From: Macrostomum lignano
Taxonomy: Eukaryota
DNA length: 64,000 nt
NCBI GenBank assembly: GCA_002269645.1
Contig: NIVC01001122.1
Location: 62,001 to 126,000, forward strand
Direction of reading: 5' to 3'
Shown: piece by piece, positions 1 through 62,153 of the stretch
Position numbering within the stretch: the first letter of the stretch is position 1
Layout: each line of letters begins with the position of its first letter
The notes under the pieces: generated by a model
Database searches by the model: none
Told to the model about the DNA's origin: nothing
Seen by the model: only the letters and a program-made list of their open reading frames with translations
Translations under genes and position numbers: made by a program

Positions 1-13
1 TCTGTTTGGGGCT

Positions 14-311
14 CATACATGCGCAACAGTTGGCCGAGTCGGCCGATCCGGCCGACCGATTTGGCGGCCAACCAAGGAAGTCGCAAATATGCCCACCCGA
101 AAAAACACCGAAGTAGTAGTACTAAGTAGCTGACGAGGCATTTTGGCTCAATAAGACAGTCATAGTTACTCCTGCCGTTTACCCGAAGTTGCGTTAATTT
201 TGCTTTAGGGTTTCTTTCCATGTAAGTCGCATTTTTGGCCAAAAACTACGTCGCATTTTTGTTAAAACTAAGTCGCACGGCCGACCGAATTTTGGAGGTT
301 GCGCATGTATG
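14..311. mobile_element. 298-bp MITE (hAT- or P-like) inserted in a 71-bp repeat unit
   Basis: 14-bp TIR CATACATGCGCAAC / GTTGCGCATGTATG; 8-bp TSD TTGGGGCT at 6-13 and 312-319. Confidence 0.9.
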
Positions 312-530
312 TTGGGGCTTTGAATCTTGGAAGGTGGTCCACCTAACCTACAGACACAACTGAAGCAGCTTTCTCAGTCTGTTTGGGGCTTTGACTTTTA
401 TAAGGTGGTCCACCTAACCTACAGACACAACTGAAGCAGCTCTCTCAGTCTGTTTGGGGCTTTGAATCTTGGAAGGTGGTCCACCTAACCTACAGACACA
501 ACTGAAGCAGCTTTCTCAGTCTGTTTGGGG

Positions 531-710
531 CCTTGGCTCTCAGAGCTGTCTTGAAAGTTTAGTGCGGGAATGTTTCCGTTTCTTGGAATGCAATCAGAAC
601 AGATTCTTAGAAAGCGAGCTGGTCCACCATGAGATCAGAATGTCTGCACTGTGTAAATGAATGGTCTCTAGGCATTCCGACTCAGATTATCGCCTAGTAG
701 TGCTGTAGAG
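531..710 (+). repeat. Array module A (about 180 bp), copy 1; further copies at 3844-4023, 7171-7348 and a diverged one at 8255-8432
   Basis: Near-identical sequence in four places. The first three end in GCTGTAGAGAAG, and each carries an internal CTGGTCCACC resembling the repeat core. Confidence 0.92.
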
Positions 711-1252
711 AAGGTGGTCCACCTAACCTACAAACACAACTGGAGCAGCTCTCTCAGTCTGTTTGAGGGTCACACGTAGGGATGTCGACCCCGGGGAGTG
801 CTCCCGGGCCCCGGGGAGCTTGTCGGGGAATATTCCCCGGGGAATTGAACCGGGGACCCCGGGGAGAAAAATGCATTTTTAACCTAATTTTTGCCATTAA
901 AATAAGAAAATAATTTACAGAGAGCTGATTGAAACTCTGTCTATGCTTTTCTTACCGCATAACTGCTTATCTCAATGTAAAATTTCAAACGCAACACACG
1001 TTTGAATGTTTTTTCACTACGAGTCCTTCAATCAAGCAAATTTCACCTAAAAACCCGTCAGGAAAAAGAAGCTTTACTGACTACTGTGTTGGTCTGCGTT
1101 GACGGCTTGACGGAATTTGACGCAGGCACAGCGCTGCGTCCTGCGGACGCATGGGGGTGTCATACAATAACAAAATGCTCCCTATTAGACAAGGACAATG
1201 TCTGCTAGAAATAAAAATTTTGATTATAAAAACGGTCTCATTCATTAATTAT

Positions 1253-1365
1253 CCTCCCACGAGCGTAGCTGCTGAGCATGCATTTTCCGCCTCCACACCA
1301 CAGTCTGGACTCCTTCTGACAAAGGTGCACGCACGATTTGATGATGCCACGTTGTCAAATACAGT
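1253..1365 (+). pseudogene. Remnant of a hAT transposase C-terminal dimerisation domain
   Basis: Translation PPTSVAAEHAFSAS...TKVHARFDDATL matches the hAT PxTSxxxERxFS...RxxLxxxxL pattern. Confidence 0.7.
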
Positions 1366-1591
1366 TTTAAATAAACACAAGCTCCCCGGGGTCGACATCC
1401 CTACTACAACCAAGGGATATAGGCATTTCTTAGGAGCCATTTAAATTTTAAAGTGATCTTATGCGAATTTTAATGTTAAAAGCTTCATGCTGTAACTAAC
1501 TAATTTAGTAGGATTGCATTGTAATCAGTTATTCATTAATTTTTCGCTATTTTTACAAACCATCCCACGTTGTCTTGACTCTTGATTTGCC

Positions 1592-2392
1592 ATCTACTGT
1601 TATAACTGAGCCTGAAGACTTGTCTATACAGAGGACAGTGTTTTGAATCTCTGGCTAAACTGTCTCTCCTCTCTGCGCCTCTCCACTCGCGGGTACAGAG
1701 AAGGCTATTAAAAAGTTATTCCAAAACACTGTACATTCGCTATGTACATTAAGCCCAATCGCCTGACCCTTCGTCTGGGGGTCTGGGCTGGTGGAATGAG
1801 TGAGCGGCACAAACAACAGAAAAAGCAGACAAACTTCACATGCTTACAGTTTCTGTCCTGATTGAGATACAGAGTTGAGACTTTACATTTAGATAGAGAA
1901 TGAGTCAATAAAGAATTGCGTCAAATTTGAAGTCAATCGCTTCACGTGGAGCAAGCTTATGACAGCCGAAAGTTAGTCATTTTAAACCTATTTACACTCC
2001 TTTGCCCAGATCGGGAAAGAGAGGCAGGCGGGCGGAGGTTGGGGTGGTTGCCTCGCTGAAAAAACAGTTAATTTTAAAAGTGCACAGCGCCTTTCAGGAT
2101 TAACTTTGAGACTTGAAATTTTACACGGTTGAAAGGATCGGTAGAAGTGGAGCGGCGCTATGGAGGATTTAGTAAAAAATCGCGCATTTTGAGCAGTTTT
2201 TGCACTTTTAGGTAGGAAGACTTGAGTTTAGGAAATTTTAAGGTAGCCTAAGACATTCTCCGTAGTAAATTTAGGGCGGGTGCAAAAGTTATCGTAATTT
2301 GGTTGAGCGGTTTGGGACTTGGGAGTCCATAGCAAAGTAATTTGTACACAGACACACACGCAGACAGAGTTTTCATTTTTATAGGTAGAGAT
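1592..2392. mobile_element. Possible nested interspersed repeat (Helentron/HINE-like ends) inside the hAT element
   Basis: Begins ATCTACTGTTATAA and ends with a CA/GACA microsatellite-like stretch then TTTTTATAGGTAGAGAT. Resemblance only. Confidence 0.25.
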
Positions 2393-2662
2393 TGTTTAGT
2401 TTTTACCCTTGCGCCTTGAACATGTAGTCTAAAGCTAAAATCAAAGTTTAAAATGCCATTTAAGATCTAAGCCAAAGTTATTCGCCGTTTTTAACTTATT
2501 TTTAATTTTCCCCGGGTCCCCGGGGAATGACAGTAAATTCCCCGGGTCCCCGATAAGAATATTCCCCGGGGAATCGACATCCCTAGTCACACGGATACAC
2601 GGCAGCGGTTTTGAATTTAAGCTTCCGACGTTGACTTGTCTTTTTATTCTCTAACATCCTAG

Positions 2663-2878
2663 GAGCCTGAGTTCGAATTTCATTCTCCTGAGCTCGACCA
2701 GTCTGACGCTTCGAAAAAGTCGAAATCGCGCTCTGCGTCTGCATCACGCCTTGATGAAGGCTCTCAGTTGCACAACGCTACCGCGGATGCAGGCGCTACT
2801 CCAGCCTCGAAGAAGGCCGCATCGCCTGGTGAAAATCGTCGGTCTACTCGCAAATACGTCGACACCGAGTCCAGAAAA
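2663..2878 (+). CDS. Repeated phase 0-0 exon B, copy 1 (72 codons, EPEFEFHSPELDQ...RKYVDTESRK)
   Basis: Preceded by TTTTTATTCTCTAACATCCTAG (branch point + acceptor), followed by GTGAGT; open frame, 216 nt. Confidence 0.7.
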
Positions 2879-3504
2879 GTGAGTTTCGCTTGATGATCTC
2901 AAAGTAGCTAGCTGCAACTCAATTGCTGTAGAGAAGCTCTTAAAAGGTGGTCCACCTAACCTACAGACACAACTGAAGCAGCTCTCTCAGTCTGTTTGGG
3001 GCTTTGACTCTTATAAGGTGGTCCACCTAACCTACAGACACAACTGAAGCAGCTTTCTCAGTCTGTTTGGGGCTTTGACTCTTGGAAGGTGGTCCACCTA
3101 ACCTACAGACACAACTGAAGCAGCTTTCTCAGTCTGTTTGGGGCTTTGACTTTTATACGGTGGTCCACCTAACCTACAGACACAACTGAAGCAGCTCTCT
3201 CAGTCTGTTTGGGGCTTTGACTCTTAAAAGGTGGTCCACCTAACCTACAGACACAACTAAAGCAGCTCTCTCAGTCTGTTTGGGGCTTTGACTCTTGGAA
3301 GGTGGTCCACCTAACCTACAGACACAACTGAAGCAGCTCTCTCAGTCTGTTTGGGGCTTTGACTCTTGGAAGGTGGTCCACCTAACCTACAGACACAACT
3401 GAAGCAGCTCTCTCAGTCTGTTTGAGGGTCACACGGATACACGGCAGCGGTTTTGAATTTAAGCTTCCGACGTTGACTTGTCTTTTTATTCTCTAACTTC
3501 CTAG

Positions 3505-3720
3505 GAGCCCGAGGTCGAATTTCGTTCTCCTGAGCTCGACCAGTCTGAGGCTTCGAAAAAGTTGAAATCGCGCTCTGCGTCTGCATCACGCCTTGATGAA
3601 GGCTCTCAGTTGCACAACGCTACCGCGGATGCAGGCGCTACTCCAGCCTCGAAGAAGGCCGCATCGCCTGGTGAAAATCGTCGGTCTACTCGCAAATACG
3701 TCGACACCGAGTCCAGAAAA
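3505..3720 (+). CDS. Repeated exon B, copy 2 (216 nt)
   Basis: Same splice signals, open frame. Confidence 0.7.
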
Positions 3721-4158
3721 GTGAGTTTCGCTTGATGATCTCAAAGTAGCTAGCTGCAACTCAATTGCTGTAGAGAAGCTCTTAAAAGGTGGTCCACCTA
3801 ACCTACAGACACAACTGAAGCAGCTCTCTCAGTCTGTTTGGGGCCTTGGCTGTCAGAGCTGTCTTGAAAGTTTAGTGCGGGAATGTTTCCGTTTCTTGGA
3901 ATGCAATCAGAACAGATTCTTAGAAAGCGAGCTGGTCCATCATGAGATCAGAATGTCTGCACTGTGTAAATGAATGGTCTCTAGGCATTCCGACTCAGAT
4001 TATCGCCTAGTAGTGCTGTAGAGAAGGTGGTCCACCTAACCTACAGACACAACTGAAGCAGCTCTCTCAGTCTGTTTGAGGGTCACACGGATACACTGCA
4101 GCGGTTTTGAATTTAAGCTTCCGACGTTGACTTGTCTTTTTATTCTCTAACTTCCTAG

Positions 4159-4374
4159 GAGCCCGAGGTCGAATTTCGTTCTCCTGAGCTCGACCAGTCT
4201 GAGGCTTCGAAAAAGTTGAAATCGCGCTCTGCGTCTGCATCACGCCTTGATGAAGGCGCTCAGTCGCACAACGCTACCGCGGATGCAGGCGCTACTCCAG
4301 CCTCGAAGAAGGCCGCATCGCCTGGTGAAAATCGTCGGTCTACTGGCAAATCCGTCGACACCGAGTCCAGAAAA
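4159..4374 (+). CDS. Repeated exon B, copy 3 (216 nt)
   Basis: Same splice signals, open frame. Confidence 0.7.
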
Positions 4375-4882
4375 GTGAGTTTCGCTTGATGATCTCAAAG
4401 TAGCTAGCTGCAACTCAATTGCTGTAGAGAAGCTGGTCCACCTAACCTACAGACACAACTGAAGCAGCTCTCTCAGTCTGTTTGGGGCTTTGAATCTTGG
4501 AAGGTGGTCCACCTAACCTACAGACACATCTGAAGCAGCTTTCTCAGTCTGTTTGGGGCTTTGACTCTTGGAAGGTGGTCCACCTAACCTACAGATACAA
4601 CTGAAGCAGCTCTCTCAGTCTGTTTGGGGCTTTGACTCTTATAAGGTGTCCACCTAACCTGCAGACACAACTGAAGCAGCTCTCTCAGTCTGTTTGGGGC
4701 TTTGACTCTTATAAGGTGTCCACCTAACCTACAGACACAACTGAAGCAGCTCTCTCAGTCTGTTTGGGGCTTTGACTCTTAGAAGGTGGTCCACCTAACC
4801 TACAGTCAAAACTTATGTACTGTTTAGGCGTTTCCGTAATGGAGTAATATGTGAGAAATTTTTTTTATTTTAGTTTCTACAG

Positions 4883-5911
4883 GGCTGTTTGGTCGAGCAG
4901 TTTACATTGGATTCTCTTCGAGGGAAGCGAGTTTTTTTTCTGTACGGCGAAAGTCAAAAGCGACAAAAGAAGCTGGAATCTGCCGTCGTCTATTATGGCG
5001 GAAGCGTTGCTTCGTTTTTTTCAAATGAGGTGTGTAGTTTTTGCAATGCATTCGTTGTTTTTGTTTGTTGCTTGTTAATAGGGCAGATTAGAGACGTTGA
5101 TAGATTTTTTGTAGCTATGGGCTCGTATTTTTTGCTTTTCCAGGTTGATTTAATCATCGCTGACGATTCCGCTGTCTCCATTGAAGCTAAACAATCTTTT
5201 TCGGAGTTTTCTAGGGGTTTCACCATGCAGCAGAGAGCCGTTACGCAAACTTCGAGTTCGCAATGCAGAATTGTCAAAACATTCGAAGATATTTTGACGA
5301 AAGCTCGCTTGCTGCAAATACCTGTCTACACTCCGGCAATATTTCGAGATCGAATTCGCGATCAAGTTTCTCAACACGAGCTGTGCCAGAAAACTATTTC
5401 TTCAGGGAGGTTTGCCGAAGAAGATCGGAATTTGACCCCACCGGCCGTTGTTGTTACGGATGCCCAGCATTTGCTGAGACCAATCTTCAAAGATAACATT
5501 GATGTCGTCGACATTTTTGCAAACCCAAGGGCTAATAATAACGATGAAAAAAATCGTCAAAAGCCTGACGGCAAAGAAAAACGGAAAGGTCGGTGTGAAA
5601 ACTGTCGCGAAGCCTACGACGACTTTAATCAGCACATAACATTAAGCCAAAAGCACCAAGATTTCGTTTCGAATAAAAAAAATTTTACTGAAATCGACCA
5701 AATCATTTCAACTCTTCCGACGCTAGACAGCGCCCTAAATGAAGCGACTCAAAAGGCTACCGCTCCTATGACACATCATGACACGAAAAAACCGGATTCG
5801 AAAGCACTACCTAACATATTTCAGCAAAATGACGGTGATAGACGCCAAGCCGCATCGCTTGGCGAAAATCGTCAGTCTGCTCGCAAATACGTCGACACCG
5901 AGTCCAAAAAA
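4883..5911 (+). CDS. DBF4: Dbf4/ASK/chiffon-like module (Cdc7 kinase activator); exons 4883-5029 and 5144-5911
   Basis: After removing the GT-AG intron 5030-5143: motif N/BRCT-like LRGKRVFFL...YYGGSVASFFSNEVDLII, motif M PPAVVVTDAQHLLRPIFK, motif C zinc finger KGRCENCREAYDDFNQHITLSQKHQDF...IDQII. All junctions are phase 0. Confidence 0.85.
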
Positions 5912-6257
5912 GTGAGTTTCGTTTAATGATCTCAAAATAGCTAGCTGCATGCAACTCAATTGCTGTAGAGAAGTTCTTAAAAGGTGGTCCACCTAAACTA
6001 CAGACACAACTGAAGCAGCTCTCTCAGTCTGTTTGGGGCTTTGACTTTTATAAGGTGGTCCACCTAACCTACAGAAACAACTGAAGCAGCTTTCTCAGTC
6101 TGTTTGGGGCTTTGACTCTTAAAAGGTGGTCCACCTAACCTACAGACACAACTGAAGCAGCTCTCTCAGTCTGTTTGAGGGTCACACGGATACACGGCAG
6201 CGGTTTTGAATTTAAGCTTCCGACTTTGACTTGTCTTTTTATTCTCTAATTTCCTAG

Positions 6258-6482
6258 GAGCCTGAGGTCGAATTTCGTTCCCGCCAAATCGAACGCACTG
6301 GTGCCTCAAAAAGAGGGCGGAAATCGCGAAGCCGTTCGCGCTCTGCATCACGCCTTGATGAAGGCGCTCAGTCGCACAACGCTACCGCGGATGCAGGCGC
6401 TACTCCAGCCTCGAAGAAGGCCGCATCGCCTGGTGAAAATCGTCGGTCTACTCGCAAATACGTCGACACCGAGTCCAGAAAA
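6258..6482 (+). CDS. Repeated exon B variant, copy 4 (225 nt, 75 codons)
   Basis: Same splice signals; net 9-nt in-frame insertion relative to copies 1-3. Confidence 0.7.
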
Positions 6483-7766
6483 GTGAGTTTCGCTTGATGA
6501 TCTCAAAGTAGCTAGCTGCAACTCAATTGCTGTAGAGAAGCTGGTCCACCTAACCTACAGAACAGACGCAACTGAAGCAGCTCTCTCAGTCTGTTTGGGG
6601 CTTTGACTCTTGGAAGGTGGTCCACCTAACCTACAGACACAACTGAAGCAGCTCTCTCAGTCTGTTTGGGGCTTTAACTCTTAAAAGGTGGTCAACCTAA
6701 CCTACAGACACAACTGAAGCAGCTTTCTCAGTCTGTTTGGGGCTTTGACTTTTATAAGGTGGTCCACCTAACCTACAGACACAACTGAAGCAGCTCTCTC
6801 AGTCTGTTTGGGGCTTTGACTTTTATAAGGTGGTCCACCTAACCTACAGACACAACTGAAGCAGCTCTCTCAGTCTGTTTGGGGCTTTGACTTTTATAAG
6901 GTGGTCCACCTAACCTACAGACACAACTGAAGCAGCTCTCTCAGTCTGTTTGGGGCTTTGACTTTTATAAGGTGGTCCACCTAACCTACAGACACAACTG
7001 AAGCAGCTCTCTCAGTCTGTTTGGGGCTTTGACTCTTAAAAGGTGGTCCACCTAACCTACAGACACAACTGAAGCAGCTCTCTCAGTCTGTTTGGGGCTT
7101 TGACTTTTATAAGGTGGTCCACCTAACCTACAGACACAACTGAAGCAGCTCTCTCAGTCTGTTTGGGGCTTTGGCTCTCAGAGCTGTCTTGAAAGTTTAG
7201 TGCGGGAATGTTTCCGTTTCTTGGAATGCAATCAGAACAGATTCTTAGAAAGCGAGCTGGTCCACCATGAGATCAGAACGTCTGCACTGTGTAAATGAAT
7301 GGTCTCAAGGCATTCCGACTCAGATTATCGCCTAGTAGTGCTGTAGAGAAGGTGGTCCACCTAACCTACAGACACAACTGAAGCAGCTCTCTCAGTCTGT
7401 TTGGGGCTTTGACTCTTAAAAGGTGGTCCACCTAACCTACAGACATCAACTGAAGCAGCTCTCTCAGTCTGTTTGGGGCTTTGACTCTTAAAAGGTGGTC
7501 CACCTAACCTACAGACACAACTGAAGCAGCTCTCTCAGTCTGTTTGGGCTTTGACTCTTGAAGGTGGTCCACCTAACCTACAGACACAACTGAAGCAGCT
7601 CTCTCAGTCTGTTTGGGGCTTTGACTTTTATAAGGTGGTCCACCTAACCTACAGACACAACTGAAGCAGCTCTCTCAGTCTGTTTGAGGGTCACACGGAT
7701 ACACTGCAGCGGTTTTGAATTTAAGCTTCCGACTTTGACTTGTCTTTTTATTCTCTAACTTCCTAG

Positions 7767-7992
7767 GAGCCTGAGGTCGAATTTCGTTCCCGCCAAATCG
7801 AACGCACCTGGTGCCTCAAAAAGAGGGCGGAAATCGCGAAGCCGTTCGCGCTCTGCATCACGCCTTGATGAAGGCGCTCAGTCGCACAAACGCTACGCGG
7901 ATGCAGGCGCTACTCCAGCCTCGAAGAAGGCCGCATCGCCTGGTGAAAATCGTCGGTCTACTCGCAAATACGTCGACACCGAGTCCAGAAAA
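7767..7992 (+). CDS. Repeated exon B variant, copy 5 (226 nt; three 1-nt indels, net +1, either error or decay)
   Basis: Same splice signals; CACCTG, CACAAA and CTACGCGG differ from copy 4 by single bases. Confidence 0.5.
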
Positions 7993-8509
7993 GTGAGTTT
8001 CGCTTGATGATCTCAAAGTAGCTAGCTGCAACTCAATTGCTGTAGAGAAGCTGGTCCACCTAACCTACAGAACAGACACAACTGAAGCAGCTCTCTCAGT
8101 CTGTTTGGGGCTTTGACTCTTAAAAGGTGGTCCACCTAACCTACAGACACAACTGAAGCAGCTCTCTCAGTCTGTTTGGGGCTTTGACTCTTGGAAGGTG
8201 GTCCACCTAACCTACAGACACAACTAAAGCAGCTCTCTCAGTCTGTTTGGGGCTTTGGCTCTCAGAGCTGTCTTGAAAGTTTAGTGCGGGAATGTTTCCG
8301 TTTCTTGGAATGCAATCAGAACAGATTCTTAGAAAGCGAGCTGGTCCACCATGAGATCAGAACGTCTGCACTGTCTAAATGAAGGGTGTCTAAACGTTTT
8401 GACTTAGATTATCGCGTTGTAGTGCTTCAGAGAATTGACTTATTGACTTTTCAGGAAAAATGAGCTAATGAGTATATCTAAGCTATGTAACTTGCTGTTT
8501 ATTTTTCAG

Positions 8510-11452
8510 GTTTGCGATAGAGACGGCGATGCTACCAAAGCAAGGATAGACGTTGCTTTTGATTTAGTAGATGATGATTCGTTTGTGGACAAAAATCTTA
8601 CGGTAGTAGACGATATTCTTGGTGGAAGGTTGCACTCAGCTTTAAGGGACATTGCAAATACGAGTATACTACCTGAGGACGCTGAACTCGAGGAAGAAGA
8701 TGGTGATGAAGATTATTATTTGGAGGAAGTCTGGTCTGATGATTTAGTTCCGTCCCAAGCGAAACTTAAGCATGAGAAGAAGAGGCATTGCTGCCTCTTT
8801 TGCGGAGAAATGTTTTCGAAGATCAGAAGGCATCTTATTCGGGCACACTCGAAGGAAATGTGTGTACAGCGCGCCCTCGCATTTAATCCTAAGTCTGATA
8901 GTAAGTTTTTGAAATAAGTTTTTTATGTAGGTCCTCATAGTAGTATTTAGTTTGTCTGAAAATAATTATCTGTTCATATTTTTTTCAGAATATGACCAGG
9001 AATTTGATCGCTTGCGCTTTCGAGGAGATTACGAACATAACATAAAAGTTATGACCCAGGAGAAGGAGGGAGGAATCATTGTGTGTCGCGAAAGAAGTTC
9101 TTCGGACATGAAAGATAATGAAGTTTCGTATTTGCCGTGCATTCACTGTTTTGGATTTTTTCGTAAAACTGAGTTAAGCAGGCATGTTCAGCGCTGCCGC
9201 TTTGTCGTAAATGTCAGCGATTTGAACAGGCGCACAGAAGCTGTCAGTGCAGGACGCTGCCTTCTCCTTGCATCATGCTTTCCGGCGAAATATCCGTCCA
9301 AATTTATTGAACTTATTAATAAAATGAAGGTAGACTCATGTAGCAAAGTAGCTCAATCAGACAAGCTTATAATGGAACTTGGCTACTACGCCTATGAAGG
9401 TTTTACATCCGGAAAGACAGGAAAGAAAATTGTAACTGCGAAAATGCGTGAAATGTCGAGATTACTTATGTCAGCTCGTGAAATTATGGGCGATCCCAGC
9501 GCTTGTCTTGACGATTTGCTGAAGCCATCATCATTTGATTTAGTTGTTGAGGCGACTCGAAATGTAGCGAAATTTACGGCCCAAGAAGATGCTCAGATTT
9601 GCGATTCTTTTTCTATTCCTTCGATGGCACTTAAGTGCGGGTTTTCTCTGAAGCTGGCTGCTGAACTGTCGTTAGTACGTGCCCTGAAATGCGAAATGCC
9701 CGAAGTAGCTCAGGAGCGACGCAACTTCATCACTCTGTATGAAACATCATGGAGCCGTAAAATATCTTCGATTGCACTTTTGTCCTTGAAAGAAAGAAAA
9801 ATTGACAAGGGTCAGACATTGCCGTTAACTAGCGACATTCAGTTAATCACGAAGCACATTAACGAATATTTAAGCCACATCGACACGGAAAAGCTAAAAA
9901 GCAGCCCTTCTTACTGGAAAGAGGTGGCCGAATATGTTGCGATTCGTTTGTCTATTTTCAACAAGCGCCGGGCGTCTGAGCCCTTCAAGCTGCGAGTTTC
10001 GGCGTGGCAGAAAGCAAGATCATGCAAAGATGTTGATGATACAACATTATCTGCGCTAAGTGAATTAGAAAAGCAAATGCTTTACCGGTTGACTATCGTT
10101 AATGTTCGAGGTAAGAGAGCACAGCGACCGGTTCCTCTGCTAGTTTCGAATGAGATTGCTGAAATTATCGATGAGCTCATTCGCACAAGACACCACGCTT
10201 CAAGTCCTTACGTATTCTGCAGTAGTGGAAGTTTGGGATATATATCCCCATTCGTTGCGCGCACAAATGTTGTCTCCAGTTGTCAAGGGCTCCAGTTCCC
10301 TGCTCGTCTATCTTCGACCAACCTTCGAAAATACATTGCCACTGTCTCTCAGATCCTTGAAATGAGAGAAAATGAGCTCGGATGGCTCTCCAACCATCTT
10401 GGACATAGCCTTAATGTTCACCATAATTTCTATCGATTGCATGAAAACACTATTGAGCTTGCTAAAGTAGGCAAGCTACTTCTGGCTATCGAGGCCGGTA
10501 GATTCGACCAGCTTAAAGGCAAAACTATCGAAGAGATTGATGTTAACGACATCGAAATTGACTATGACATTGACGATAAGTCAGATGCAAAAAAAGATGA
10601 TTTGAACGAATCCGGTGATGTGGAAGCCTCAATAGGCTCACAGGCTCGAGAATTAAAACGTGGTGACCAAAAGAGTCAAGCACCTCCTGAGAATAATGGA
10701 GCTCGTATCCAAGCTAAGGAATTTGAGGACGAGTCAATTTATCACGAAGGTTCTGTCGACTTTCGCGGAGCCCCCCTGTCCATCAAGCAAGTCGAAAAAA
10801 AGAAGAATCGATTAGCTGTGCTCGACTCAGATGAATATGAAAGCGAAGTAGACAAAGACGATTCAGACTACCAACCGACGAAAAAAACCAGAAAAGTGCA
10901 GAAAGCTAGAGCAAACGAAAGGCGGATTCGAAGGACGACTAAGCCAAAGGGTGCGACAGCAACAACGACTAATAACAAAAGCGAGCCAGGACATGGACAA
11001 GAGGACCCACAGAAGGACAAAAGCGAGCCAGGACCCGGACAAGAGGACCCACAGAAGGACAAAAGCGAGCCAGGACCCGGACAAGAGGACCCACAGAAGG
11101 ACAAAAGCGAGCCAGGACCCGGACAAGAGGACCCACAGAAGGACAAAAGCGCTCCTAGTTCGGAAGGTAAGGACAAAATGGGAACTGGGGGAAGAAAAAA
11201 ACCAAAGTTGATTTCAGTTACTTCAATCCATTTCAGAAGTCAAGAAAAAAACTAATTCAGGAGCACATTGCGTGGAACAAAGACGAAAATGAGGCAATTA
11301 ACCGCGCGATAGAAAAGATCGAAGACGGCAAAGTACCTGGTTTTGCAGCCCTTGGAGAGCTAAAAGCACGCGAACCTGCACTCCAGTCACGATCGATCCA
11401 TAAAATAAAAACGAAGTTTTTCAATGAAATGAAAAAACGCGGCATTTTGTGA
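8510..11452 (+). CDS. Tyrosine recombinase with two N-terminal zinc-finger-like motifs and a C-terminal SANT/Myb-like domain; exons 8510-8900, 8989-11166 and 11237-11452
   Basis: Motifs FNKRRASE (R), VRGKR (K), STNLRK (R), NHLGH...NFY (H, Y); CLFC...H...H and CIHC...H...C fingers; last exon HIAWNKDENEA...GKVPG...PALQSRS..IK. Both introns are GT-AG phase 1. One extra A in the A7 run near 11245 must be removed to keep frame. Confidence 0.88.
10980..11150 (+). repeat. Coding 42-bp tandem repeat x4 (SEPGPGQEDPQKDK) in the YR tail
   Basis: Read directly. Confidence 0.95.
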
Positions 11453-11649
11453 CTAAACGCTTTATGATTGCTAACACTAAGATTAAAAAGCATCTATTAG
11501 TTTAGCTGACAAGAAATACCTGTTCACTATCGATAGCATAGCGATGGCTTTTGGGGGCGGTCCAAGTTTGGGACGCCAAACTGAGTATGAGGGGCGCCAA
11601 TTTTTAAGCTGGGGGTGCAAAAAACGTGTAGGGGGGGGGGGAATGCGAG

Positions 11650-12060
11650 TCGCCGTTTTAAAAATGCTTCAATTTCTTGTATCTGTTTGATACAATTTCC
11701 ATTTTAATAACTGTCGCCGTTTTAAAAATGCTTCAATTTCTTGTATCTGTTTTATACAATTTCCATTTTAATAACTGTTGCCCTTTTAAAAATGCTTCAA
11801 CTTCTTGTACTCCCTATGACTTTTTTAACTAATGCAATCCTAAGTTTGTTAAACGTGTAGTTTAAGAATGTACTTCCGGACTTAAATTAGTTTCAATGAC
11901 TTTGCAGTTAGTTTAATTAGGTTTAAATCTTTTGCGTTAAGGCAAGCGAAATGATTCGGTATTTATTTTCAAAATGCTTCAATTTCTTATATCTGTTTGA
12001 TACAATTTCCATTTTAATAACTGTTGCCGTTTTAAAAATGCTTCAACTTCTTGTATCCCT
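11650..12060. repeat. About 64-bp AT-rich subterminal direct repeats (GCCGTTTTAAAAATGCTTCAATTTCTTGTATCTGTTTGATACAATTTCCATTTTAATAACT)
   Basis: Copies near 11650, 11713, 11777 and 11970-12055. Confidence 0.85.
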
Positions 12061-12490
12061 GAGTGTGCGTTGTTTTTCTTTCGTAACTAATGCAGTTTAA
12101 CCCATAGTTTAGTAAAGCTAAATAAATTCGTTTGAACCAGGGTTTTTTTAATAAAATGGAATCGTAAACCTTTTTTATCTTCTGTTTCTTGAGAATTTCT
12201 GTTTTAATTAGCCCAAAATAACAGTTTGAAACTCATAAATTTTCTACAAAGAAAGAGGTCTAACTAAACCAACTGTTTTTTTGCGGTCCACCTAACCCGG
12301 TCCCCAAAACGTAGTTAGTGAACCGCCACAGTTTCCACGAACTGGCTATTCCGTCAAGTTAACAAAAAGATAACCCTAGCTAGCCTTTCGCGTTGTCAAA
12401 ACAGACTCTATTTTTTAACCGGAATTGCGTGGTCCACGTAACGCATTAACATAACTCAGGTCCCGCTAAACACACAGACAGTCGTAAGAG

Positions 12491-12538
<48 letters not shown>
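12491..12538. repeat. (TGTC)12 microsatellite, probable insertion target of the YR element
   Basis: Directly abuts the element end. Confidence 0.9.
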
Positions 12539-12539
<1 letters not shown>

Positions 12540-12564
12540 TGCCAACCCGTCTTCCCAGACTCAC

Positions 12565-15500
12565 CTGCGCCGGCAGTCAGGAAAGGACTCCTCAGTGAGC
12601 AGGCTGCCGTAGGCGGTCTGCGGCCCCAGCGCGGGCGGGAAGGCGCCCACCTGTGACATGATTAGCGACAGCAGGCACTCGGCCGCCTGGGCCAGCCGTG
12701 CGGAATGCGGGCTCTTCTGTTTGCGCCACTTCGGCTCGAACCTGGTGGCCTCGCCTCGGTGCTCGACGCGCGACTTGGAGCCCGACAAGCCCAGCTCGAT
12801 GATCTCCAGCAGGCAGATGAGGGTGTCCTCATCTAGCAGTAGCTGGGGATAGTTTAGCGCCCACTGGGCCAAGCAGTCGTACGTGGCCACGATTTGCGAG
12901 TGCAGGTAGCGCGAGTGCTCCTGCCTGGGCCGGGCGCACTGGCTGCTAATGAAGTCGCACAGCCAGCGGACGCAGCTTTTCAACAGGTTCTGCGTGTTGT
13001 GCGGCCCGCCGAATGAGCTCTGCGTTTGGGCGCGGGGGATGTACTTTAGTGGCCTCGCGAGAACTCTAGCGAGGAATTACAGAAGGACAGGAATTTCAGT
13101 TGCCAATGCTTAATGACAGAATCTATATTTACACTACTTTACTGGTGCACCCAGCTGGCTGTAAAATGGGTGCTGGGGTAATTGAGGGTGCGTGTGGCGA
13201 CCCCCAGTCCTTGTACTGAACAGCCGTACGCAGCCTTCAGATGCGCCGCGCAATAGCTGCGGCTGAGCTGTCGGTTGCACATCAATTATTATTATTATAT
13301 ACTGGACCAGCAACCGGCTGCGCCAGCCCCAGCTACAGCAGCTGGCACTGGACTATGCCAGCAACCGGCTGCGCCAGCCCCAGCTACAGCAGCTGGCACT
13401 GGACTATGCCAGCAACCGGCTGCGCCAGCCCCAGCTACAGCAGCTGGCACTGGACCATGCCAGCAACCAGCTGCGCCAGCCCCAGCTACAGCAGCTGGCA
13501 CTGAACTATGCCAGCAACCGGCTGCGCCAGCCCCAGCTACAGCAGCTGGCACTGGACCATGCCAGCAACCATAAATATTTTCCCAACGTTAGCCGATTAA
13601 ATTGGTGAAGGAGGCCGCTCACCTGTCCGATTGGCAGTCTGGCCAGGTGGCTCAACACGTCCAATGCAGTCAGGGTGGTGTCGTAGTCCATCTTCAGGGC
13701 GGAGTCGTGCTCAAGGTTGAGCCGCTTGCAGATTGCCGCAACTGCCTGGGTGAACAGCTTCTGCACCGAGTCTGCTAGGGGTGGGGTTGGGATTTTGGTG
13801 GGGCTGGGCGAGGCCGCGTTTTAGATTGCAGGGGTTGGGGATGAACTCGGCTTCAAAAAGATATAGGATTAGAGGCGAAGAATGGTGATTGGGTTGGTTT
13901 AAATTAATCTAATTGATTTGATGAACTGATTTATAATTATTTCATCATACATATTCTAAACTTCAACTGCTGAATTAGTGGAAAGAATGCCTGAGAAGGG
14001 GAATATGCGATCAAACAGATCATGAGGAAGTTATGACATTGAAAAGGGGATAAAAAATCATGGGATTAAATAAGGAAACTCTTGGGATAGAATAGGGGAA
14101 TTATTGGATCAAATAGGGGAATTATTTGATCGAATAGGGAATTACGGCATCGAATAGGGAATTATGGCATTGAATAGATTAAGGAATCGAATAAGGGATT
14201 TAAGGATCGAATAAGAGATTTAAGGGATCGAATAGGGGATTTAAAGGATCGAATAGGGGATTTAAGGGATCGAATAGAGGATTTAAGGGATCGAATAGGG
14301 GATTTAAGGGATCGAATAGGGGAATTATTTTATCGAATAGGGGATTTAAGGGATCGAATAGGGGATTTAAGGGATCGAATAGGGGATTTAAGGGATCGAA
14401 TAGGGGAATTATTTTATCGAATAGGGGATTTAAGGGATCGAATAGGGGATTAAAAGGATCGAATAAGAGATTTAAGGGATCGAATAGGGGATTTAAAGGA
14501 TCGAATAGGGGATTTAAGGGATCGAATAGAGGATATAAGGGATCGAATAGGGGATTTAAGGGATCGAATAGGGGATTTAAGGGATCGAATAGGGGATTTA
14601 AGGGATCGAGTAGGAAGGAGAACCATTGGGATGATTGAGATAAATGAACTTAAAAAATACCTGGCGCTTTGGGCACGGCGCGAACGCCTGCATCCGTGCA
14701 GGACTCGTCGCTGTGCACCAAATTCTCGTAGCTGGCCAAGTCTTCAGCTATGCAAAGCAGAGCGCACAGCAGCATCTGCACGCAGTGGGAGTCCCTCAAC
14801 AACAGCAGAGTGTCCAGCACCAGCACCACAATGTCCTGACGAAGCGACAGGAATGTACGCGGCGCCGACCGACTGTCCAACGGGTGGAGAATCTCCGATT
14901 GGCCGAAATGATTGGGCAGGGCGATCATGGAAAGCAGGAGGCGAACCGCGGACCGTTGCAGGTCGACAGGTGTTGGCACGCCGCTGGGCAAGTTGCTGAT
15001 GGAGTCCTGCTGCATAGGGATTGAAAGCCACATTCCACTTAGAATATTATATATTATTCCAATATTAGATTTGGAATATTAGCATTGGGATTTGGAAAAT
15101 TAGCATAGGGATTTGGAATGTTAGCATTGGGATTTGGAAAATTAGCATAGGGATTTGGAATGTTAGCATTGGGATTTGGAAAATTAGCATAGGGATTTGG
15201 AATGTTAGCATTGGGATTTGGAAAATTAGCATAGGGATTTGGAATGTTAGCATAGGGATTCGGAATGTTAGCATAGGGATTCGGAATGTTAGCATAGGGA
15301 TTTGGAATGTTAGCATAGGGATGTGGAATATTACCATCGGGATTTTGAATATTAGCCTTGGGATTTGGAATATTAGCATAGGGATTTGGAATATTAGCAC
15401 AGGGATTTGGAATATTAGCACAGGGATTTGGAATATTAGCCTTGGGATTTGGAATATTAGCCTTGGGATTTGGAATATTAGCCTTGGGATTTGGAATATT

Positions 15501-18500
15501 AGCATTGGGATTTGGAATATTAGCATTGGGATTTGGAATATTAGCATTAAGATTTGGAATATTAGCATTGGGATTTGGAATATTAGCATTGGGATTTGGA
15601 ATATTAGCATTGAGATTTGGAATATTAGCATAGGGATTTGGAATGTTAGCATAGGGATTTGGAATATTAGCCTTGGGATTTGGAATATTAGCATAGGGAT
15701 TTGGAATATTAGCCTTGGGATTTGGAATATTAGCATAGGGATTTGGAATATTAGCATTGGGATTTGGAATATTAGCATTGGGATTTGGAATATTAGCATT
15801 GGGATTTGGAATATTAGCATTGGGATTTGGAATATTAGCATTGAGATTTGGAATATTAGCATAGGGATTCGGAATGTTAGCATAGGGATTTGGAATATTA
15901 GCCTTGGGATTTAGAATATTAGCATAGGGATTTGGAATATTAGCCTTGGGATTTGGAATATTAGCCTTGGGATTGGGAATATTAGCATAGGGATCGGAAT
16001 GTTAGCATAGGGATTTGGAATATTAGCCTTGGGATTTGGAATATTAGCATAGGGATTTGGAATATTAGCATAGGGATTCGGAATGTTAGCATAGGGATTT
16101 GGAATATTAGCATTGGGATTTAATATTAGCATAGGGATTTGGAATATTAGCCTTGGGATTTGGAATGTTAGCATTGGGATTAGGAAAATTAGCATAGGGA
16201 TTTGGAATATTAGCCTTGGGATTGGGAATATTAGCATAGGGATACGGAATGTTAGCATAGGGATTTGGAATATTAGCCTTGGGATTTGGAATATTAGCAT
16301 AGGGATTTGGAATATTAGCCTTGGGATTTGGAATATTAGCCTTGGGATTGGGAATATTAGCATAGGGATTTGGAATATTAGCATAGGGATTTGGAATATT
16401 AGCCTTGGGATTTGGAATATTAGCCTTGGGATTGGGAATATCATGCTTTAGGAATAGCAACCAGCCTTGAAATTCGTGTTGTTGCAGTTAAACTTTGATC
16501 CCTAAAGAAATTTGAACAACTCAGCTGATACCAACCTTCAGTATATAATGCACAGCTTTAAAATAGCTTGGCAGTAGAACGTGCACGCCTTTAAGTCCGG
16601 CTGACAGCAGGCCCTGTGAGTGGTACACAACTGTATTCAACAGCAGCGGCTGCAGCGGCGGCTCCAGTGCGTTGAACATGGCGGCGTAGAACCTGAACAA
16701 AATTCAATTTAAATGCAGTGCTTTAATATGGCTGACAGTAGTGCACTGCGAAAATGCTAGTGAACAAAACTATTGTTGGAATAGCAAACAATTCGCATAC
16801 ATAAGCTTACAGAACATCCATTTTAGCATTAAAAAGCGACTCATGTATTTGCTAACCAGAAGTGTCACTGACAAACGGTGTCACTGACTAAAAATGTCAC
16901 TGACTAAAAATGCCACTGACTAAAAATGTCACTGACTAAAAATGTCACTGAATAAACTGTCACTGACTAAAAATGCCACTGACTAACGGTGTCACTGACT
17001 AAAAATGTCACTGACTAAAAATGCCTCTGACTAAAAATGCCACTGACCAACAGTGTCACTAACGGTGTCTCTCTGACTAAAAATGCCACTGACCAACAGT
17101 GTCACTAACGGTGTCTCTCTGACTAAAAATGCCACTGACTAAAAATGCCACTGACTAAAAATGTCACTGACTAAAAATGTCTCTGACTAAAAATGCCACT
17201 GACTAAAAATGTCTCTGACTAAAAATGTCACTGACTAAAAGTGTCTCTGACTAAAATTGTCACTGACTAAAATGTCACTGACTAAAAATGTCACTGACTA
17301 AAAATGTCACTGACTAAAAATGTCACTGACTAAAAATGTCTCTGACTAAAAATGCCACTGACTAAAAATGTCACTGACTAACTGTGTCACTGACTAACTG
17401 TGTCACTGACTAAAAATGTAACTAAACATAATCTAGAAAATCACTAAAAATCACTGATCAAGTGTCACTGACTAAAAATATCACTGATAGAGTGTCACTA
17501 AATAAAATGTCACTGAATAAAATTTCACTAATCAAGCGTCACTGACTAAAATATCACTGATCAAGTGTCACTGACTAAAATTTCACTAATCAAGCGTCAC
17601 TGACTAAAATATCACTGATCAAGTGTCACTGACTAAAATTTCACTAATCAAGTGTCACTGACTAAAATATCACTGATCAAGTGTCACTAAATAAAATGTC
17701 ACTGAATAAAATTTCACTAATCAAGCGTCACTGACTAAAATATCACTGATCAAGTGTCACTAAATAAAATGTCACTGAATAAAATTTCACTAATCAAGCG
17801 TCACTGACTAAAATATCACTGATCAAGTGTCACTGACTAAAATTTCACTAATCAAGTGTCACTGACTAAAATATCACTGATCAAGTGTCACTAAATAAAA
17901 TGTCACTGAATAAAATTTCACTAATCAAGCGTCACTGACTAAAATATCACTGATCAAGTGTCACTAAATAAAATGTCACTGAATAAAATTTCACTAATCA
18001 AGCGTCACTGACTAAAATATCACTGATCAAGTGTCACTGACTAAAATATCACTGATCAAGTGTCACTAAATAAAATGTCACTGAATAAAATTCCACTAAT
18101 CAAGTGTCACTGACTAAAATATCACTGATCAAGTGTTACTGACTAAAAATATCACTGATTAAGCGTCACTGAATAAAATGTCACTGAAGAAAATGTCACT
18201 GATCAAAATGTCACTGACTAAAAATATCACTGATCAAGTGTCACTGGCTAAAATATCACCGATTAAGTGTGTCACTGACTAAGATGTCACTGATTAAGTG
18301 TCACTGACTAAGCCAAAAGCCACTGCAGTGAGCAGCCCAATAGTCACCTGGCCAAGTAGACGGGCAGAAAATCGGGCCGGCAGTTGGCAAAAAGCCTGCA
18401 GAGGCAGCCGCAGGCCTCGGCCCGGCCCAGCTGATAGGCCGGGTCCGACACCCCGGCGCAGTCGAACAGCCAGGAGCCAATCAGGTGAAGCAGAGAATTG

Positions 18501-45504: not shown

Positions 45505-45991
45505 CTCTTGTTGGACAGATTAGTAGAAAAACGCAGCTCCCTGCTCTCACACCCTAAAAAGTTTTAATAAAAAAGATGAAGTTCCGCTTTCCATCAGCTG
45601 TTTTTAAAGCCATAAGCCCATCAGTCAACGCAAAAAAGATAATCCCATGCAAGGTTTTAAGTAGCCTCCTGTAAGCTTTTTTTACGAAATGAAAAAAATA
45701 TCACTTGTCGCAGGCTTTGCATGGCAACAGAAAATTATTTAGAGCGACGGCAATCTAATGGGAATTCGCCGCAATGAGGTGGAGGAGTGGAAGATTCGCC
45801 CGCCCACCCAGCCTTCCCGGCAACTACTGTAGAAATGAGCTTATTCACGATAAGATTTCCCCGATTTCCCCCTGTCACAGCCGTCGAAAATCTCTTTCAG
45901 TGGATGGCTGCTGATCGCCCACCTATGCGTCTCGCCCTCTCCCTTGCTCTTCCCCTCACCTCATTCACACGCGGTTGGTCAAGGAGAAAGC

Positions 45992-46721: not shown

Positions 46722-53999
<7,278 letters not shown>

Positions 54000-57777: not shown

Positions 57778-60017
<2,240 letters not shown>

Positions 60018-61324: not shown

Positions 61325-62153
<829 letters not shown>

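What the first reader, a model, noticed from the sequence alone, without database searches (positions are those of the whole stretch)
2663..11452. Predicted Dbf4-tyrosine recombinase fusion gene in a Crypton-like element
Seen: a module with all three Dbf4 motifs ends at a phase-0 GTGAGT donor (5912). The recombinase module begins at a phase-0 acceptor (8509), and the intervening B exons are phase 0-0, so one spliced frame of about 1600 aa or more (start exon outside the window) links them. Known: Dbf4 targets Cdc7 kinase to replication origins, stalled forks and meiotic break sites, and tyrosine recombinases drive Crypton excision and integration. Inference: the element captured Dbf4 and may couple its recombination to S phase or meiosis, or recruit host DDK. 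I know of no described Dbf4-YR fusion. Alternative: a host DBF4 gene invaded by, or merely adjacent to, a YR element.
Basis: partly seen in the sequence, partly recalled or inferred. Interest (0 to 1): 0.92.

Follow-up and report, generated by a model that had tools for sequence, protein, structure and literature searches.

The report
Flatworm Dbf4–tyrosine recombinase fusion gene
In the flatworm Macrostomum lignano, one spliced gene joins a Dbf4-like module (the partner of the replication kinase Cdc7) to an apparently intact transposon-type tyrosine recombinase; I found no published description of this combination, and its function is untested.

Summary
The window is Macrostomum lignano DNA. 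Exons at 4883-5029 and 5144-5911 encode a Dbf4-like module: zf-DBF at 59 bits, a near-threshold BRCT, and a motif-M-like stretch. Exons at 8510-8900, 8989-11166 and 11237-11452 encode a tyrosine recombinase (YR) with two zinc fingers and invariant R-K-R-H-Y residues. Its model is confident (pLDDT 87) and its best structural matches are XerA and IntI. All junctions are phase-compatible, and 1470 codons stay open if exon B2 is skipped.

A public gene model built only from RNA data (PAA93368.1, from a collinear copy) joins the end of the Dbf4 exon, four B exons and the YR. It starts inside the Dbf4 exon only because that assembly lacks one A in a homopolymer.

"Crypton-like element" is only loosely right:
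- The YR belongs to a large animal family (5964 clusters) that never matches DUF3504.
- M. lignano shows only two loci of it, and no element ends were found.
- Its paralog carries a chromodomain; fish and echinoderm relatives carry SET or BRCT modules.

So Dbf4 looks like one more swapped N-terminal chromatin module.

Still open: whether a second DBF4 exists, whether spliced-leader trans-splicing also makes a separate YR, and whether the frame-breaking indels are real.

The parts
2663..2878 (+). Repeat exon A1. 216 nt, phase 0-0, Ser/Lys/Arg-rich; ends ...SPGENRRSTRKYVDTESRK|gtgagt.
   Evidence: It is present in the ab initio model P0172.
3505..3720 (+). Repeat exon A2 (216 nt, phase 0-0).
4159..4374 (+). 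Repeat exon A3 (216 nt, phase 0-0).
4883..5029 (+). Dbf4 exon D1. Holds the first half of the BRCT-like motif N. An alternative in-frame acceptor lies at 4873/4874.
   Evidence: The database models P0003 and P0172 use the acceptor at 4882/4883.
5144..5911 (+). Dbf4 exon D2. Holds the rest of motif N, motif M (5432-5491), the zf-DBF motif C (5573-5716), and a 3' cassette shared with exon 1 and the A/B exons. Phase-0 GTGAGT donor at 5912.
   Evidence: Pfam PF07535 at 59 bits. PDB DBF4 matches. Cassette alignment. The A-run at about 5667-5675 is one base shorter in L001.
6258..6482 (+). Repeat exon B1 (225 nt, phase 0-0, RS-rich).
   Evidence: It is part of the transcript-based CDS P0002.
7767..7992 (+). 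Repeat exon B2. 226 nt with three small indels relative to B1. Including it gives a stop 33 codons in, so it is a pseudo-exon or an assembly error.
8510..8900 (+). YR exon Y1. Acidic N-terminal region plus the first C2H2-type zinc finger (C 8792, C 8801, H 8831, H 8846). Starts at a strong 3' splice site (tttatttttcag|G) and has no initiator Met.
8989..11166 (+). YR exon Y2. Second zinc finger (CCHC, 9138-9197), core-binding and catalytic domains, then an acidic/basic tail with a 42-bp coding tandem repeat. Catalytic residues: R 9969, K 10113, T 10317, R 10326, H 10404, Y 10431.
   Evidence: Invariant columns. Residue coordinates. AF2 model, pLDDT 87. Foldseek top matches XerA and IntI. Tandem repeat.
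11237..11452 (+). YR exon Y3. Conserved C-terminal tail (GKVPG..AL..LK..EPAL..RS..KFFNEM). In this copy a 7-A run (about 11246-11252) shifts the frame and gives a stop after EVKKKTNSGAHCVEQRRK.
   Evidence: The tail is conserved in the paralog P0005 and across the family.
2937..8262 (.). Arrays of a 71-bp minisatellite inside the introns that follow each cassette exon: 2937-3424, 4428-4813, 5975-6177, 6538-7173, 7349-7686, 8072-8262, and also 312-535. They are the likely substrate for the unequal exchange that varies A/B exon number.
   Evidence: Exon numbers differ between the window (3 A + 2 B) and L001 (4 A + 4 B).

Best explanation
This is one multi-exon gene of Macrostomum lignano. Its cis-spliced mRNA encodes a protein of about 1,500-1,900 aa, built in this order:
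- a short basic start exon (just outside the window);
- copy-number-variable Ser/Arg-rich cassette exons (A);
- a Dbf4 module with motifs N, M and C;
- further cassette exons (B);
- a complete tyrosine recombinase with two zinc fingers, a core-binding domain, a catalytic domain with an intact R-K-R-H-Y set, and a conserved C-terminal tail.

The recombinase comes from a very large animal family of YR genes that lack reverse transcriptase and behave like transposons. In different lineages that family carries different N-terminal chromatin modules: SET, tandem BRCT, chromodomain. In M. lignano the family is low-copy and built into spliced genes, one with a chromodomain and this one with Dbf4.

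Shown: the anatomy, the in-frame junctions, a transcript-derived CDS joining the Dbf4 exon to the YR, the YR fold and residues, and the family-wide swapping of N-terminal modules.

Inferred: motifs M and C would bind Cdc7. That would either tether the recombinase to DDK substrates (MCM at licensed origins or forks, meiotic break sites), or let DDK phosphorylate the S/T-rich linker so that recombinase activity is gated to S phase. The direction of capture is not settled: either the YR lineage took up a Dbf4 copy, or the host DBF4 gene took up a YR.
For: - Splice phases and the 1470-codon open frame.
- zf-DBF at 59 bits and BRCT at E 8e-4.
- DBF4 PDB matches, with sub-threshold motif N and motif M alignments in the right order.
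- NCBI PAA93368.1 joins D2, four B exons and the YR. That annotation is purely transcript-based (PMC5730564).
- Its start at MTHHD is explained by a 1-nt homopolymer deletion in L001 relative to the window.
- A start exon with an ATG lies in frame upstream in L001.
- Y1 starts at a 3' splice site and has no Met for 112 codons.
- The YR family has 5964 clusters.
- Invariant R369, K417, R488, H514 and Y523, plus two zinc fingers.
- AF2 pLDDT 87, with top Foldseek matches XerA and IntI.
- PF00589 is hit by 2 of the 35 sequences of alignment A1 (the window core plus 34 relatives).
- The paralog is chromo plus repeat exons plus YR, also transcript-based, on three scaffolds. It shares an intron with this gene at the same position and phase.
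- SET and BRCT N-termini occur in relatives from teleosts and a brittle star.
- GC3 is 0.42 for both the Dbf4 and the YR exons, against 0.64-0.87 for the neighbouring host gene.
Against: - No RNA reads were inspected directly.
- The transcript model covers only the last 48 codons of the Dbf4 exon. All cassette exons share the same 3' end, so short reads cannot say which cassette exon is spliced to Y1. An isoform that skips Dbf4 is possible.
- Each available copy has a frame-breaking indel somewhere: B2 and the tail in the window, D2 and the tail in L001.
- The Y1 acceptor fits the spliced-leader acceptor motif, and the leader ends in ATG, in frame. A stand-alone YR is therefore possible.
- No Cdc7 interaction or recombinase activity has been tested.
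- No ortholog from another Macrostomum species was available to test conservation.
Confidence: 0.6

Rival explanations
1. Two genes in one transcription unit. A host DBF4 gene is followed by a YR gene, and the mature YR mRNA is made by spliced-leader trans-splicing at 8510. The leader's terminal ATG supplies the start codon. The fused model would then be a precursor or a minor read-through isoform, and Dbf4 and the YR would act as separate proteins.
For: - The M. lignano spliced leader ends in ...TTGCATG, and the trans-splice acceptor motif is [T/C]TNCAG. The Y1 acceptor is TTTCAG|G in phase 0, so the leader ATG would be in frame.
- About 7% of assembled M. lignano transcripts are polycistronic precursors.
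- Many family members in other animals are stand-alone proteins that begin just before the first zinc finger.
- If B2 is included, the window copy would make a Dbf4-only product.
Against: - The annotation pipeline cuts transcription units at mapped spliced-leader sites, yet the deposited CDS runs across the B-to-Y1 junction by cis-splicing.
- I saw no AATAAA in the stretch read between B2 and Y1.
- In the paralog, the last repeat unit and the YR N-terminus lie in one exon, so an N-terminal extension is built in there.
Confidence: 0.2
2. An autonomous, currently mobile Crypton-type DNA transposon that carries a captured Dbf4 gene as cargo or as part of its transposase.
For: - The YR keeps all its catalytic residues.
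- The family is multi-copy in other animals: for example, at least 6 loci share 90% or more identity in Hemibagrus.
- The window and L001 share nothing downstream of a (TGTC)n tract about 1 kb past the stop codon. That could be an element boundary.
- GC3 of both modules is unlike that of the neighbouring host gene.
Against: - Only two family loci (plus their polyploid copies) turned up in M. lignano protein sets.
- The window and L001 are collinear for about 12 kb, like homeologs.
- No terminal repeats were found.
- No empty site or second insertion context is shown.
- The gene has at least 9 introns carrying minisatellites and nested MITEs, which is unlike a compact transposon.
- No DUF3504 similarity.
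Confidence: 0.12
3. A decaying or misassembled locus. The apparent fusion would be a transcribed pseudogene or an assembly and annotation artefact of a repeat-rich, polyploid region, and no functional fusion protein is made.
For: - Frame-breaking indels occur in every assembled copy, at different places: B2 and the tail in the window, D2 and the tail in L001.
- The ML2 ab initio models are plainly messy: P0004 and P0172 use wrong frames and a foreign 3' end.
- RNA-seq was mapped with up to 1000 multi-mapped positions allowed.
Against: - The D2 and tail indels sit in A-homopolymers (A8/A9, A6/A7), as long-read errors typically do, and the three small B2 indels are one-base changes in short C/A runs. 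Other assemblies show the intact state (P0003 and P0173 for D2, P0001 for the tail).
- About 1470 codons remain open.
- Catalytic residues and zinc ligands are intact.
- The C-terminal tail is strongly conserved with the paralog, which is 56% identical.
Confidence: 0.08

Closest known systems
Crypton-derived recombinase fusions in host genes (KCTD1 isoform b, the YR in an ATF7IP intron in birds, ZMYM2-4/QRICH1/WOC; Kojima & Jurka 2011, PMC3212892)
   Same: A transposon-type tyrosine recombinase domain is exonized and joined by splicing to unrelated host modules, often chromatin-related ones. It is low-copy in the host.
   Different: Those domains are DUF3504, and all but the bird ATF7IP-intron YR (which that paper says may still be catalytic) have lost the catalytic tyrosine and second arginine. 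Here there is no DUF3504 match and all of R-K-R-H-Y is kept. The partner, Dbf4, has not been reported.
Crypton DNA transposons (CryptonA/I/F/S)
   Same: The gene encodes a YR without reverse transcriptase. Animal Cryptons have no terminal repeats, and none is found here. The wider family is multi-copy in many animals.
   Different: This is a different YR clade by Pfam. It adds two N-terminal zinc fingers and a conserved C-terminal tail. The T-x-x-R motif replaces H-x-x-R across the family. Mobility and element ends are not shown in M. lignano.
Dbf4/ASK, regulatory subunit of Cdc7 kinase (DDK)
   Same: The order is motif N (BRCT-like), then M, then C (zf-DBF CCHH). The best sequence matches are yeast and human DBF4.
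   Different: It is flanked by repeated cassette exons and continues in frame into a recombinase. It is very divergent: no non-Macrostomum match passed in the word-indexed search.
Mobile-element proteins fused to chromatin modules (chromovirus integrase chromodomains; SETMAR, which is SET plus a mariner transposase). Recalled from general knowledge, not tested here.
   Same: A DNA-rearranging enzyme carries a chromatin reader or writer module at one end. Relatives of this YR carry chromo, SET and BRCT modules.
   Different: Those enzymes are DDE-type, not tyrosine recombinases. None carries a kinase-regulatory subunit such as Dbf4.

Membership tests
Dbf4 (DDK regulatory subunit) | Motif C: DBF-type CCHH zinc finger | tested here: met
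   PF07535 at 59 bits against a cut-off of 24.8. phmmer matches to yeast Dbf4 (7pt6, E 2e-6) and human DBF4 (4f99, E 4e-4).
Dbf4 (DDK regulatory subunit) | Motif N: BRCT-like domain N-terminal to motifs M and C | tested here: inconclusive
   PF00533 BRCT at 20.1 bits against a cut-off of 21.3, E 8e-4. A sub-threshold alignment falls on yeast Dbf4 residues 144-183. Single-sequence AF2 failed (pLDDT 34).
Dbf4 (DDK regulatory subunit) | Motif M (Cdc7-binding, proline-rich) between N and C | tested here: inconclusive
   LTPPAVVVTDAQHLLRPIFK aligns to human LKKPFVKVEDMSQLYRPFYL. The alignment is below threshold on its own, but the position is correct.
Dbf4 (DDK regulatory subunit) | Binds and activates Cdc7 | not testable with these tools
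   Needs co-IP or a kinase assay.
Tyrosine recombinase superfamily | Catalytic residues R, K, H, R, H/W and the Y nucleophile | tested here: met
   R369, K417, R488, H514 and Y523 are invariant in 35 sequences and present in the window. The first His (H-x-x-R) is Thr in the whole family.
Tyrosine recombinase superfamily | Two-domain integrase fold | tested here: met
   AF2 with a 35-sequence alignment gave pLDDT 87.2. The top five Foldseek PDB matches are XerA (5hxy) and the integron integrase (2a3v), probability 1.00, E 0.007-0.02, TM 0.44-0.48 per target.
Tyrosine recombinase superfamily | Match to Pfam Phage_integrase PF00589 | tested here: inconclusive
   The window protein gives no hit. 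Two of the 35 aligned sequences hit at E down to 5e-6. Other hits are weak, E about 0.02.
Crypton transposons (CryptonA / DUF3504 clade) | The YR is similar to DUF3504 | tested here: not met
   0 of the 35 aligned sequences (window core plus 34 relatives) at E<=0.01 and 0 of 9 proteins at E<=10.
Crypton transposons (CryptonA / DUF3504 clade) | YR-only element, no reverse transcriptase | tested here: met
   There is no RT domain in the gene or between it and the neighbouring genes. The only RT in the window is an unrelated Ty3/Gypsy element at 47868-51587.
Crypton transposons (CryptonA / DUF3504 clade) | Multiple dispersed copies and definable ends (short terminal direct repeats) | tested here: inconclusive
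   Only two loci of the family were found in M. lignano. No flanking repeats. The 3' flank differs between the window and L001 from a (TGTC)n tract onward. A whole-genome search was not possible.
Domesticated (inactive) YR-derived genes | Loss of catalytic residues | tested here: not met
   All catalytic residues are retained.

The most novel reading that the evidence does not exclude
A catalytically competent site-specific recombinase is made as one polypeptide with the Cdc7-activating subunit Dbf4. Recombination (or transposition) would then be physically coupled to the replication or meiotic kinase DDK.

This would be one instance of a broader pattern I found no description of: a huge animal YR-element family that swaps N-terminal chromatin modules (SET, BRCT, chromodomain, Dbf4) to choose where or when it acts.
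Probability: 0.35. Interest if true: 0.85.

Novelty: new variant of a known kind. Interest (0 to 1): 0.68.

Why it matters
If the fusion protein is real and active, it links two systems not known to be joined: the kinase switch that fires replication origins and licenses meiotic breaks, and a DNA-cutting and rejoining enzyme of transposon origin.

That would give a testable model for how a recombinase or mobile element is timed to S phase or aimed at replication origins. M. lignano has routine transgenesis (PMC5730564) and, from general knowledge not checked here, RNAi.

The family-level result also matters for two reasons. The same recombinase carries SET, BRCT, chromo or Dbf4 modules in different animals, which suggests modular chromatin targeting in a large family that none of the sources consulted here names. 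And public annotation calls thousands of these genes 'uncharacterized protein' or merges them with host genes.

Tried and rejected
- The word-indexed homology search with the YR found only the locus's own models. The exhaustive HMMER search was needed to reveal the family.
- The word-indexed search with the Dbf4 module found only this locus's models. It cannot show whether a second, divergent DBF4 exists.
- I spent the third homology search on the neighbouring RALGAPB-like exon, hoping to place the window on a scaffold. It returned nothing.
- phmmer of the YR against PDB sequences gave nothing useful. The profile search gave only zinc-finger hits and a weak XerA hit.
- AF2 on the Dbf4 module alone failed (pLDDT 34), so there is no structural test of motif N.
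- I looked for a Dbf4 module in the other proteins held, including the top 150 relatives. None has one.
- I looked for terminal repeats between the upstream and downstream flanks of L001. Only microsatellite matches came up.
- Literature searches returned no papers for Macrostomum + Crypton, Macrostomum + DBF4, Mlig000236, Dbf4 + tyrosine recombinase, and YR + SET + chromodomain.
- The supplements of two M. lignano papers hold no entry for Mlig000236, Mlig016835 or DBF4.
- I rejected the ATG at 8468 (the start of the UniRef model P0001) as a real start. Its 14 codons are the polypyrimidine tract and CAG of the 3' splice site.
- I rejected an unspliced reading of 11167-11255. The intron 11167-11236 (phase 1) restores the family-conserved tail once the 7-A run is read as 6.
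- I rejected the 3' extension of P0172. It is absent from the window.

Full report
**Source and setting.** The window is Macrostomum lignano, a free-living flatworm. The recombinase exons are 100% identical to UniRef A0A1I8J1L2 and to NCBI PAA93368.1 (BOX15_Mlig000236g2). The locus of the NCBI protein is L001 (Mlig_3_7 scaffold NIVC01000029.1:548919-575932). It is collinear with window ~330-12504 at 99.2-99.8% identity, but it carries different numbers of the repeated units. This species is a hidden polyploid with much duplicated sequence. The window is therefore another copy, or another assembly, of the same locus.

**Anatomy.** All features are on the + strand.
- Cassette exons A1-A3: 2663-2878, 3505-3720 and 4159-4374. 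Each is 216 nt, phase 0-0.
- Dbf4 exons D1 and D2: 4883-5029 and 5144-5911.
- Cassette exon B1: 6258-6482, 225 nt.
- Cassette exon B2: 7767-7992, 226 nt. It is frameshifted and runs into a stop.
- Recombinase exons Y1, Y2 and Y3: 8510-8900, 8989-11166 and 11237-11452.

Every acceptor and donor is canonical. Splicing A1-A3, D1, D2, B1, Y1 and Y2 gives 1470 open codons.

The start exon lies about 0.7 kb upstream of the window. In L001 it is at 3358-3516 (ATG...TESRK|gtgagt, phase 0), and it is followed there by one more A exon.

The last ~63 nt of exon 1, of D2 and of every A and B exon are homologous, as are the first ~60 nt of the intron that follows each of them. Those introns carry arrays of a 71-bp minisatellite. 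The cassette number differs between copies: 3 A + 2 B in the window, 4 A + 4 B in L001. Unequal exchange is the likely cause. Because the cassettes are phase 0-0, any number of them keeps the frame.

**The Dbf4 module.**
- Pfam zf-DBF scores 59 bits. BRCT scores 20.1 bits (E 8e-4), just under its threshold.
- Against PDB sequences the only matches are yeast and human DBF4. They match through the zinc finger.
- Sub-threshold alignments fall on the yeast BRCT-like region and on human motif M, in N-M-C order.
- A structural test of motif N failed because there was no alignment depth.

I accept it as a Dbf4-type module. Motif C is firm. Motifs N and M are probable.

**The recombinase module.** Pfam gives no hit for the window protein. 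An exhaustive HMMER search finds 5964 representative clusters at E<=1e-3, of which 932 reach 1e-30.

Named members come from several groups and are all annotated "uncharacterized protein":
- teleosts;
- a brittle star (Amphiura);
- an acorn worm (Ptychodera);
- M. lignano itself.

In Hemibagrus at least six loci share 90% or more identity, so the family behaves as a multi-copy element there.

An alignment of 35 sequences (the window core plus 34 relatives) has these invariant columns, all present in the window:
- two zinc fingers (C2H2 and CCHC);
- R369 (NKRRxSE), K417 (GKR), T485-x-x-R488, H514 (LGH) and Y523.

AlphaFold2 with this alignment gives pLDDT 87. Its five best PDB matches are XerA and an integron integrase. 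Two of the 35 aligned sequences match PF00589.

None matches DUF3504, the family that covers CryptonA recombinases and their domesticated derivatives (PMC3212892). So it is a tyrosine recombinase with an apparently intact active site. It belongs to a clade distinct from DUF3504 Cryptons. "Crypton-like" holds only in the loose sense of a YR gene without reverse transcriptase.

**Is the fusion real?**

Evidence for it:
- The GenBank annotation of Mlig_3_7 derives only from RNA-seq and transcript assemblies (StringTie, TACO, a de novo assembly). Boundaries are cut at mapped spliced-leader and poly(A) sites, and ORFs are called by TransDecoder (PMC5730564).
- Its CDS PAA93368.1 reads MTHHDTKK...KYVDTESKK|EPEVEF... 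(four B exons) ...ESRK|VCDRDGD....
- It starts inside D2 only because L001 has one A fewer in the homopolymer at window ~5667-5675. That deletion closes the upstream frame in that assembly. In the window the frame is open back through D1 and the A exons.
- Y1 starts exactly at a polypyrimidine/CAG acceptor and has no Met for 112 codons. It cannot be a first exon of its own.

Caveats:
- I saw no reads myself.
- All cassette exons share the same 3' end, so short reads cannot tell which one is joined to Y1.
- The spliced leader ends in ATG, and the Y1 acceptor fits the trans-splice motif in phase 0 (PMC8629364). A stand-alone YR mRNA is therefore a live alternative or a co-product.

**Family context.** This is the most informative new result.

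The closest relative of the window's YR (56% identity) is a second M. lignano gene, BOX15_Mlig016835g2/g3/g4.
- It is also transcript-based.
- It encodes a chromodomain, then its own tandemly repeated exons, then the YR.
- It lies inside an intron of an ankyrin/armadillo gene.
- The two paralogs share an intron at the same codon and phase.

Among the top 150 relatives, many have long N-terminal extensions. Of ten tested, four carry a SET domain (teleosts and Amphiura) and one carries tandem BRCT domains (Hemibagrus). These extensions are often followed by tandem repeats. None carries Dbf4.

Attaching a chromatin-related module to the N-terminus of this recombinase through a repetitive linker is thus a recurrent property of the family. 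Dbf4 is the module in this lineage.

The Dbf4 and YR exons also share GC3: 0.419 and 0.423, with the paralog at 0.446. The RALGAPB-like gene 1 kb away has 0.64-0.87. This fits the two modules having evolved as one unit, but it is weak evidence.

**Mobile element or resident gene?** In M. lignano I found only these two family loci and their near-identical polyploid copies. I found no terminal repeats. The gene is long and intron-rich, and MITEs are nested in its introns.

One observation is unexplained. The window and L001 stop matching at a (TGTC)n tract about 1 kb past the stop codon. The window continues into a RALGAPB-like gene. L001 continues into more than 8.8 kb of satellite-like sequence. 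The cause could be a structural variant, an assembly join, or a second genomic context.

I favour a resident, exonized but catalytically intact recombinase gene over an active transposon.

**Integrity.** Each copy has frame-breaking indels:
- B2 (three small indels) and the 7-A run in Y3 in the window;
- the D2 A-run and the same 7-A run in L001.

ML2-based models show the intact states for D2 and for the tail. The tail is well conserved with the paralog. The D2 and Y3 indels lie in A-homopolymers. They may be long-read errors, but this is not settled.

**Mechanism.** This part is inferred. Motifs M and C of Dbf4 bind Cdc7, which is established knowledge for the family. A Dbf4-YR polypeptide would therefore either bring the recombinase to DDK targets or put the recombinase and its S/T-rich linker under DDK control. 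Nothing here tests that.

**Novelty.** YR exonization into host genes is known: KCTD1, ZMYM, and the YR in an ATF7IP intron in birds. Mobile-element enzymes fused to chromatin modules are also known. A Dbf4 partner, and the SET/BRCT/chromo/Dbf4 series on this YR clade, were not found in the searchable literature. Public databases already hold partial or messy models of the fusion (P0002, P0172), but they carry no functional annotation. My verdict is a new variant of a known kind, of fairly high interest.

Noticed in passing
window 312-535, 2937-3424, 4428-4813, 5975-6177, 6538-7173, 7349-7686, 8072-8262: Arrays of a 71-bp minisatellite (core GGTGGTCCACCTAACCTACAGACACAACTGAAGCAGCTCTCTCAGTCTGTTTGGGGCTTTGA) sit in every intron that follows a cassette exon. 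The number of A/B cassette exons differs between the window (3+2) and L001 (4+4).
   Followed up: partly
window 12-311: A 300-bp insertion with perfect 14-bp terminal inverted repeats (CATACATGCGCAAC / GTTGCGCATGTATG) lies inside a minisatellite unit. It is absent from the collinear locus L001, so it is a MITE presence/absence difference between copies.
   Followed up: partly
window 776-1404 (and 2510-2586): An element with perfect 23-bp terminal inverted repeats (GTAGGGATGTCGACCCCGGGGAG). By eye, its internal ORF end looks like a hAT transposase C-terminus (not tested). A further copy of the terminal motif at 2575-2586 suggests a larger or nested element inside the first intron seen in the window.
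   Followed up: partly
window 12491-12539; L001 18205-18222: Similarity between the window and the Mlig_3_7 locus ends abruptly at a (TGTC)n microsatellite about 1 kb downstream of the stop codon. The flanks beyond it are unrelated.
   Followed up: partly
window 12561-22131, minus strand: Exons of a RALGAPB-like gene (Pfam RALGAPB_N in ORFs 18344-18949 and 21307-22131). Its GC3 is very high (0.64-0.87), and it converges on the 3' end of the Dbf4-YR gene.
   Followed up: partly
window 25428-29725, minus strand: A run of five long ORFs (161-392 aa) with no Pfam match and TE-like GC3 (0.45-0.55). It may be an uncharacterised element or gene.
   Followed up: no
window 47868-51587, minus strand: An intact-looking 1239-aa Ty3/Gypsy-type gag-pol ORF with protease, RT, RNase H, and integrase H2C2 and rve domains.
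   Followed up: partly
window 35196-45523: A 10.3-kb satellite of a 37-bp unit (278 copies, 97% matches) with strong GC skew. There are also long (ATCT)n tracts at 46792-47060, 57778-60017 and 61325-62153, and a 74/226-bp purine-rich array at 54823-57233.
   Followed up: no
window 10975-11151: A 42-bp in-frame tandem repeat (4.2 copies, KSEPGPGQEDPQKD) lies in the C-terminal linker of the recombinase.
   Followed up: no
L002 10001-16587 (NIVC01000850.1): The paralogous chromodomain-YR gene has its own tandemly repeated exons (10959-11348, 12271-12660 and 13335 onward). It lies within the span of an ankyrin/armadillo-repeat gene on the same strand.
   Followed up: partly
relatives P0105, P0135, P0048, P0078, P0049 (SET) and P0072 (BRCT): YR relatives in teleosts and a brittle star carry N-terminal SET domains. 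A multi-copy catfish (Hemibagrus) lineage carries tandem BRCT domains. One SET form also has a weak LEDGF-like match.
   Followed up: partly
window 6258-6482 and the other cassette exons: The cassette exons are open in two reading frames. The ML2 models P0004 and P0172 read them in the alternative frame (SLRSNFVPAKSNALVPQKEGG...), most likely because of assembly frameshifts.
   Followed up: no
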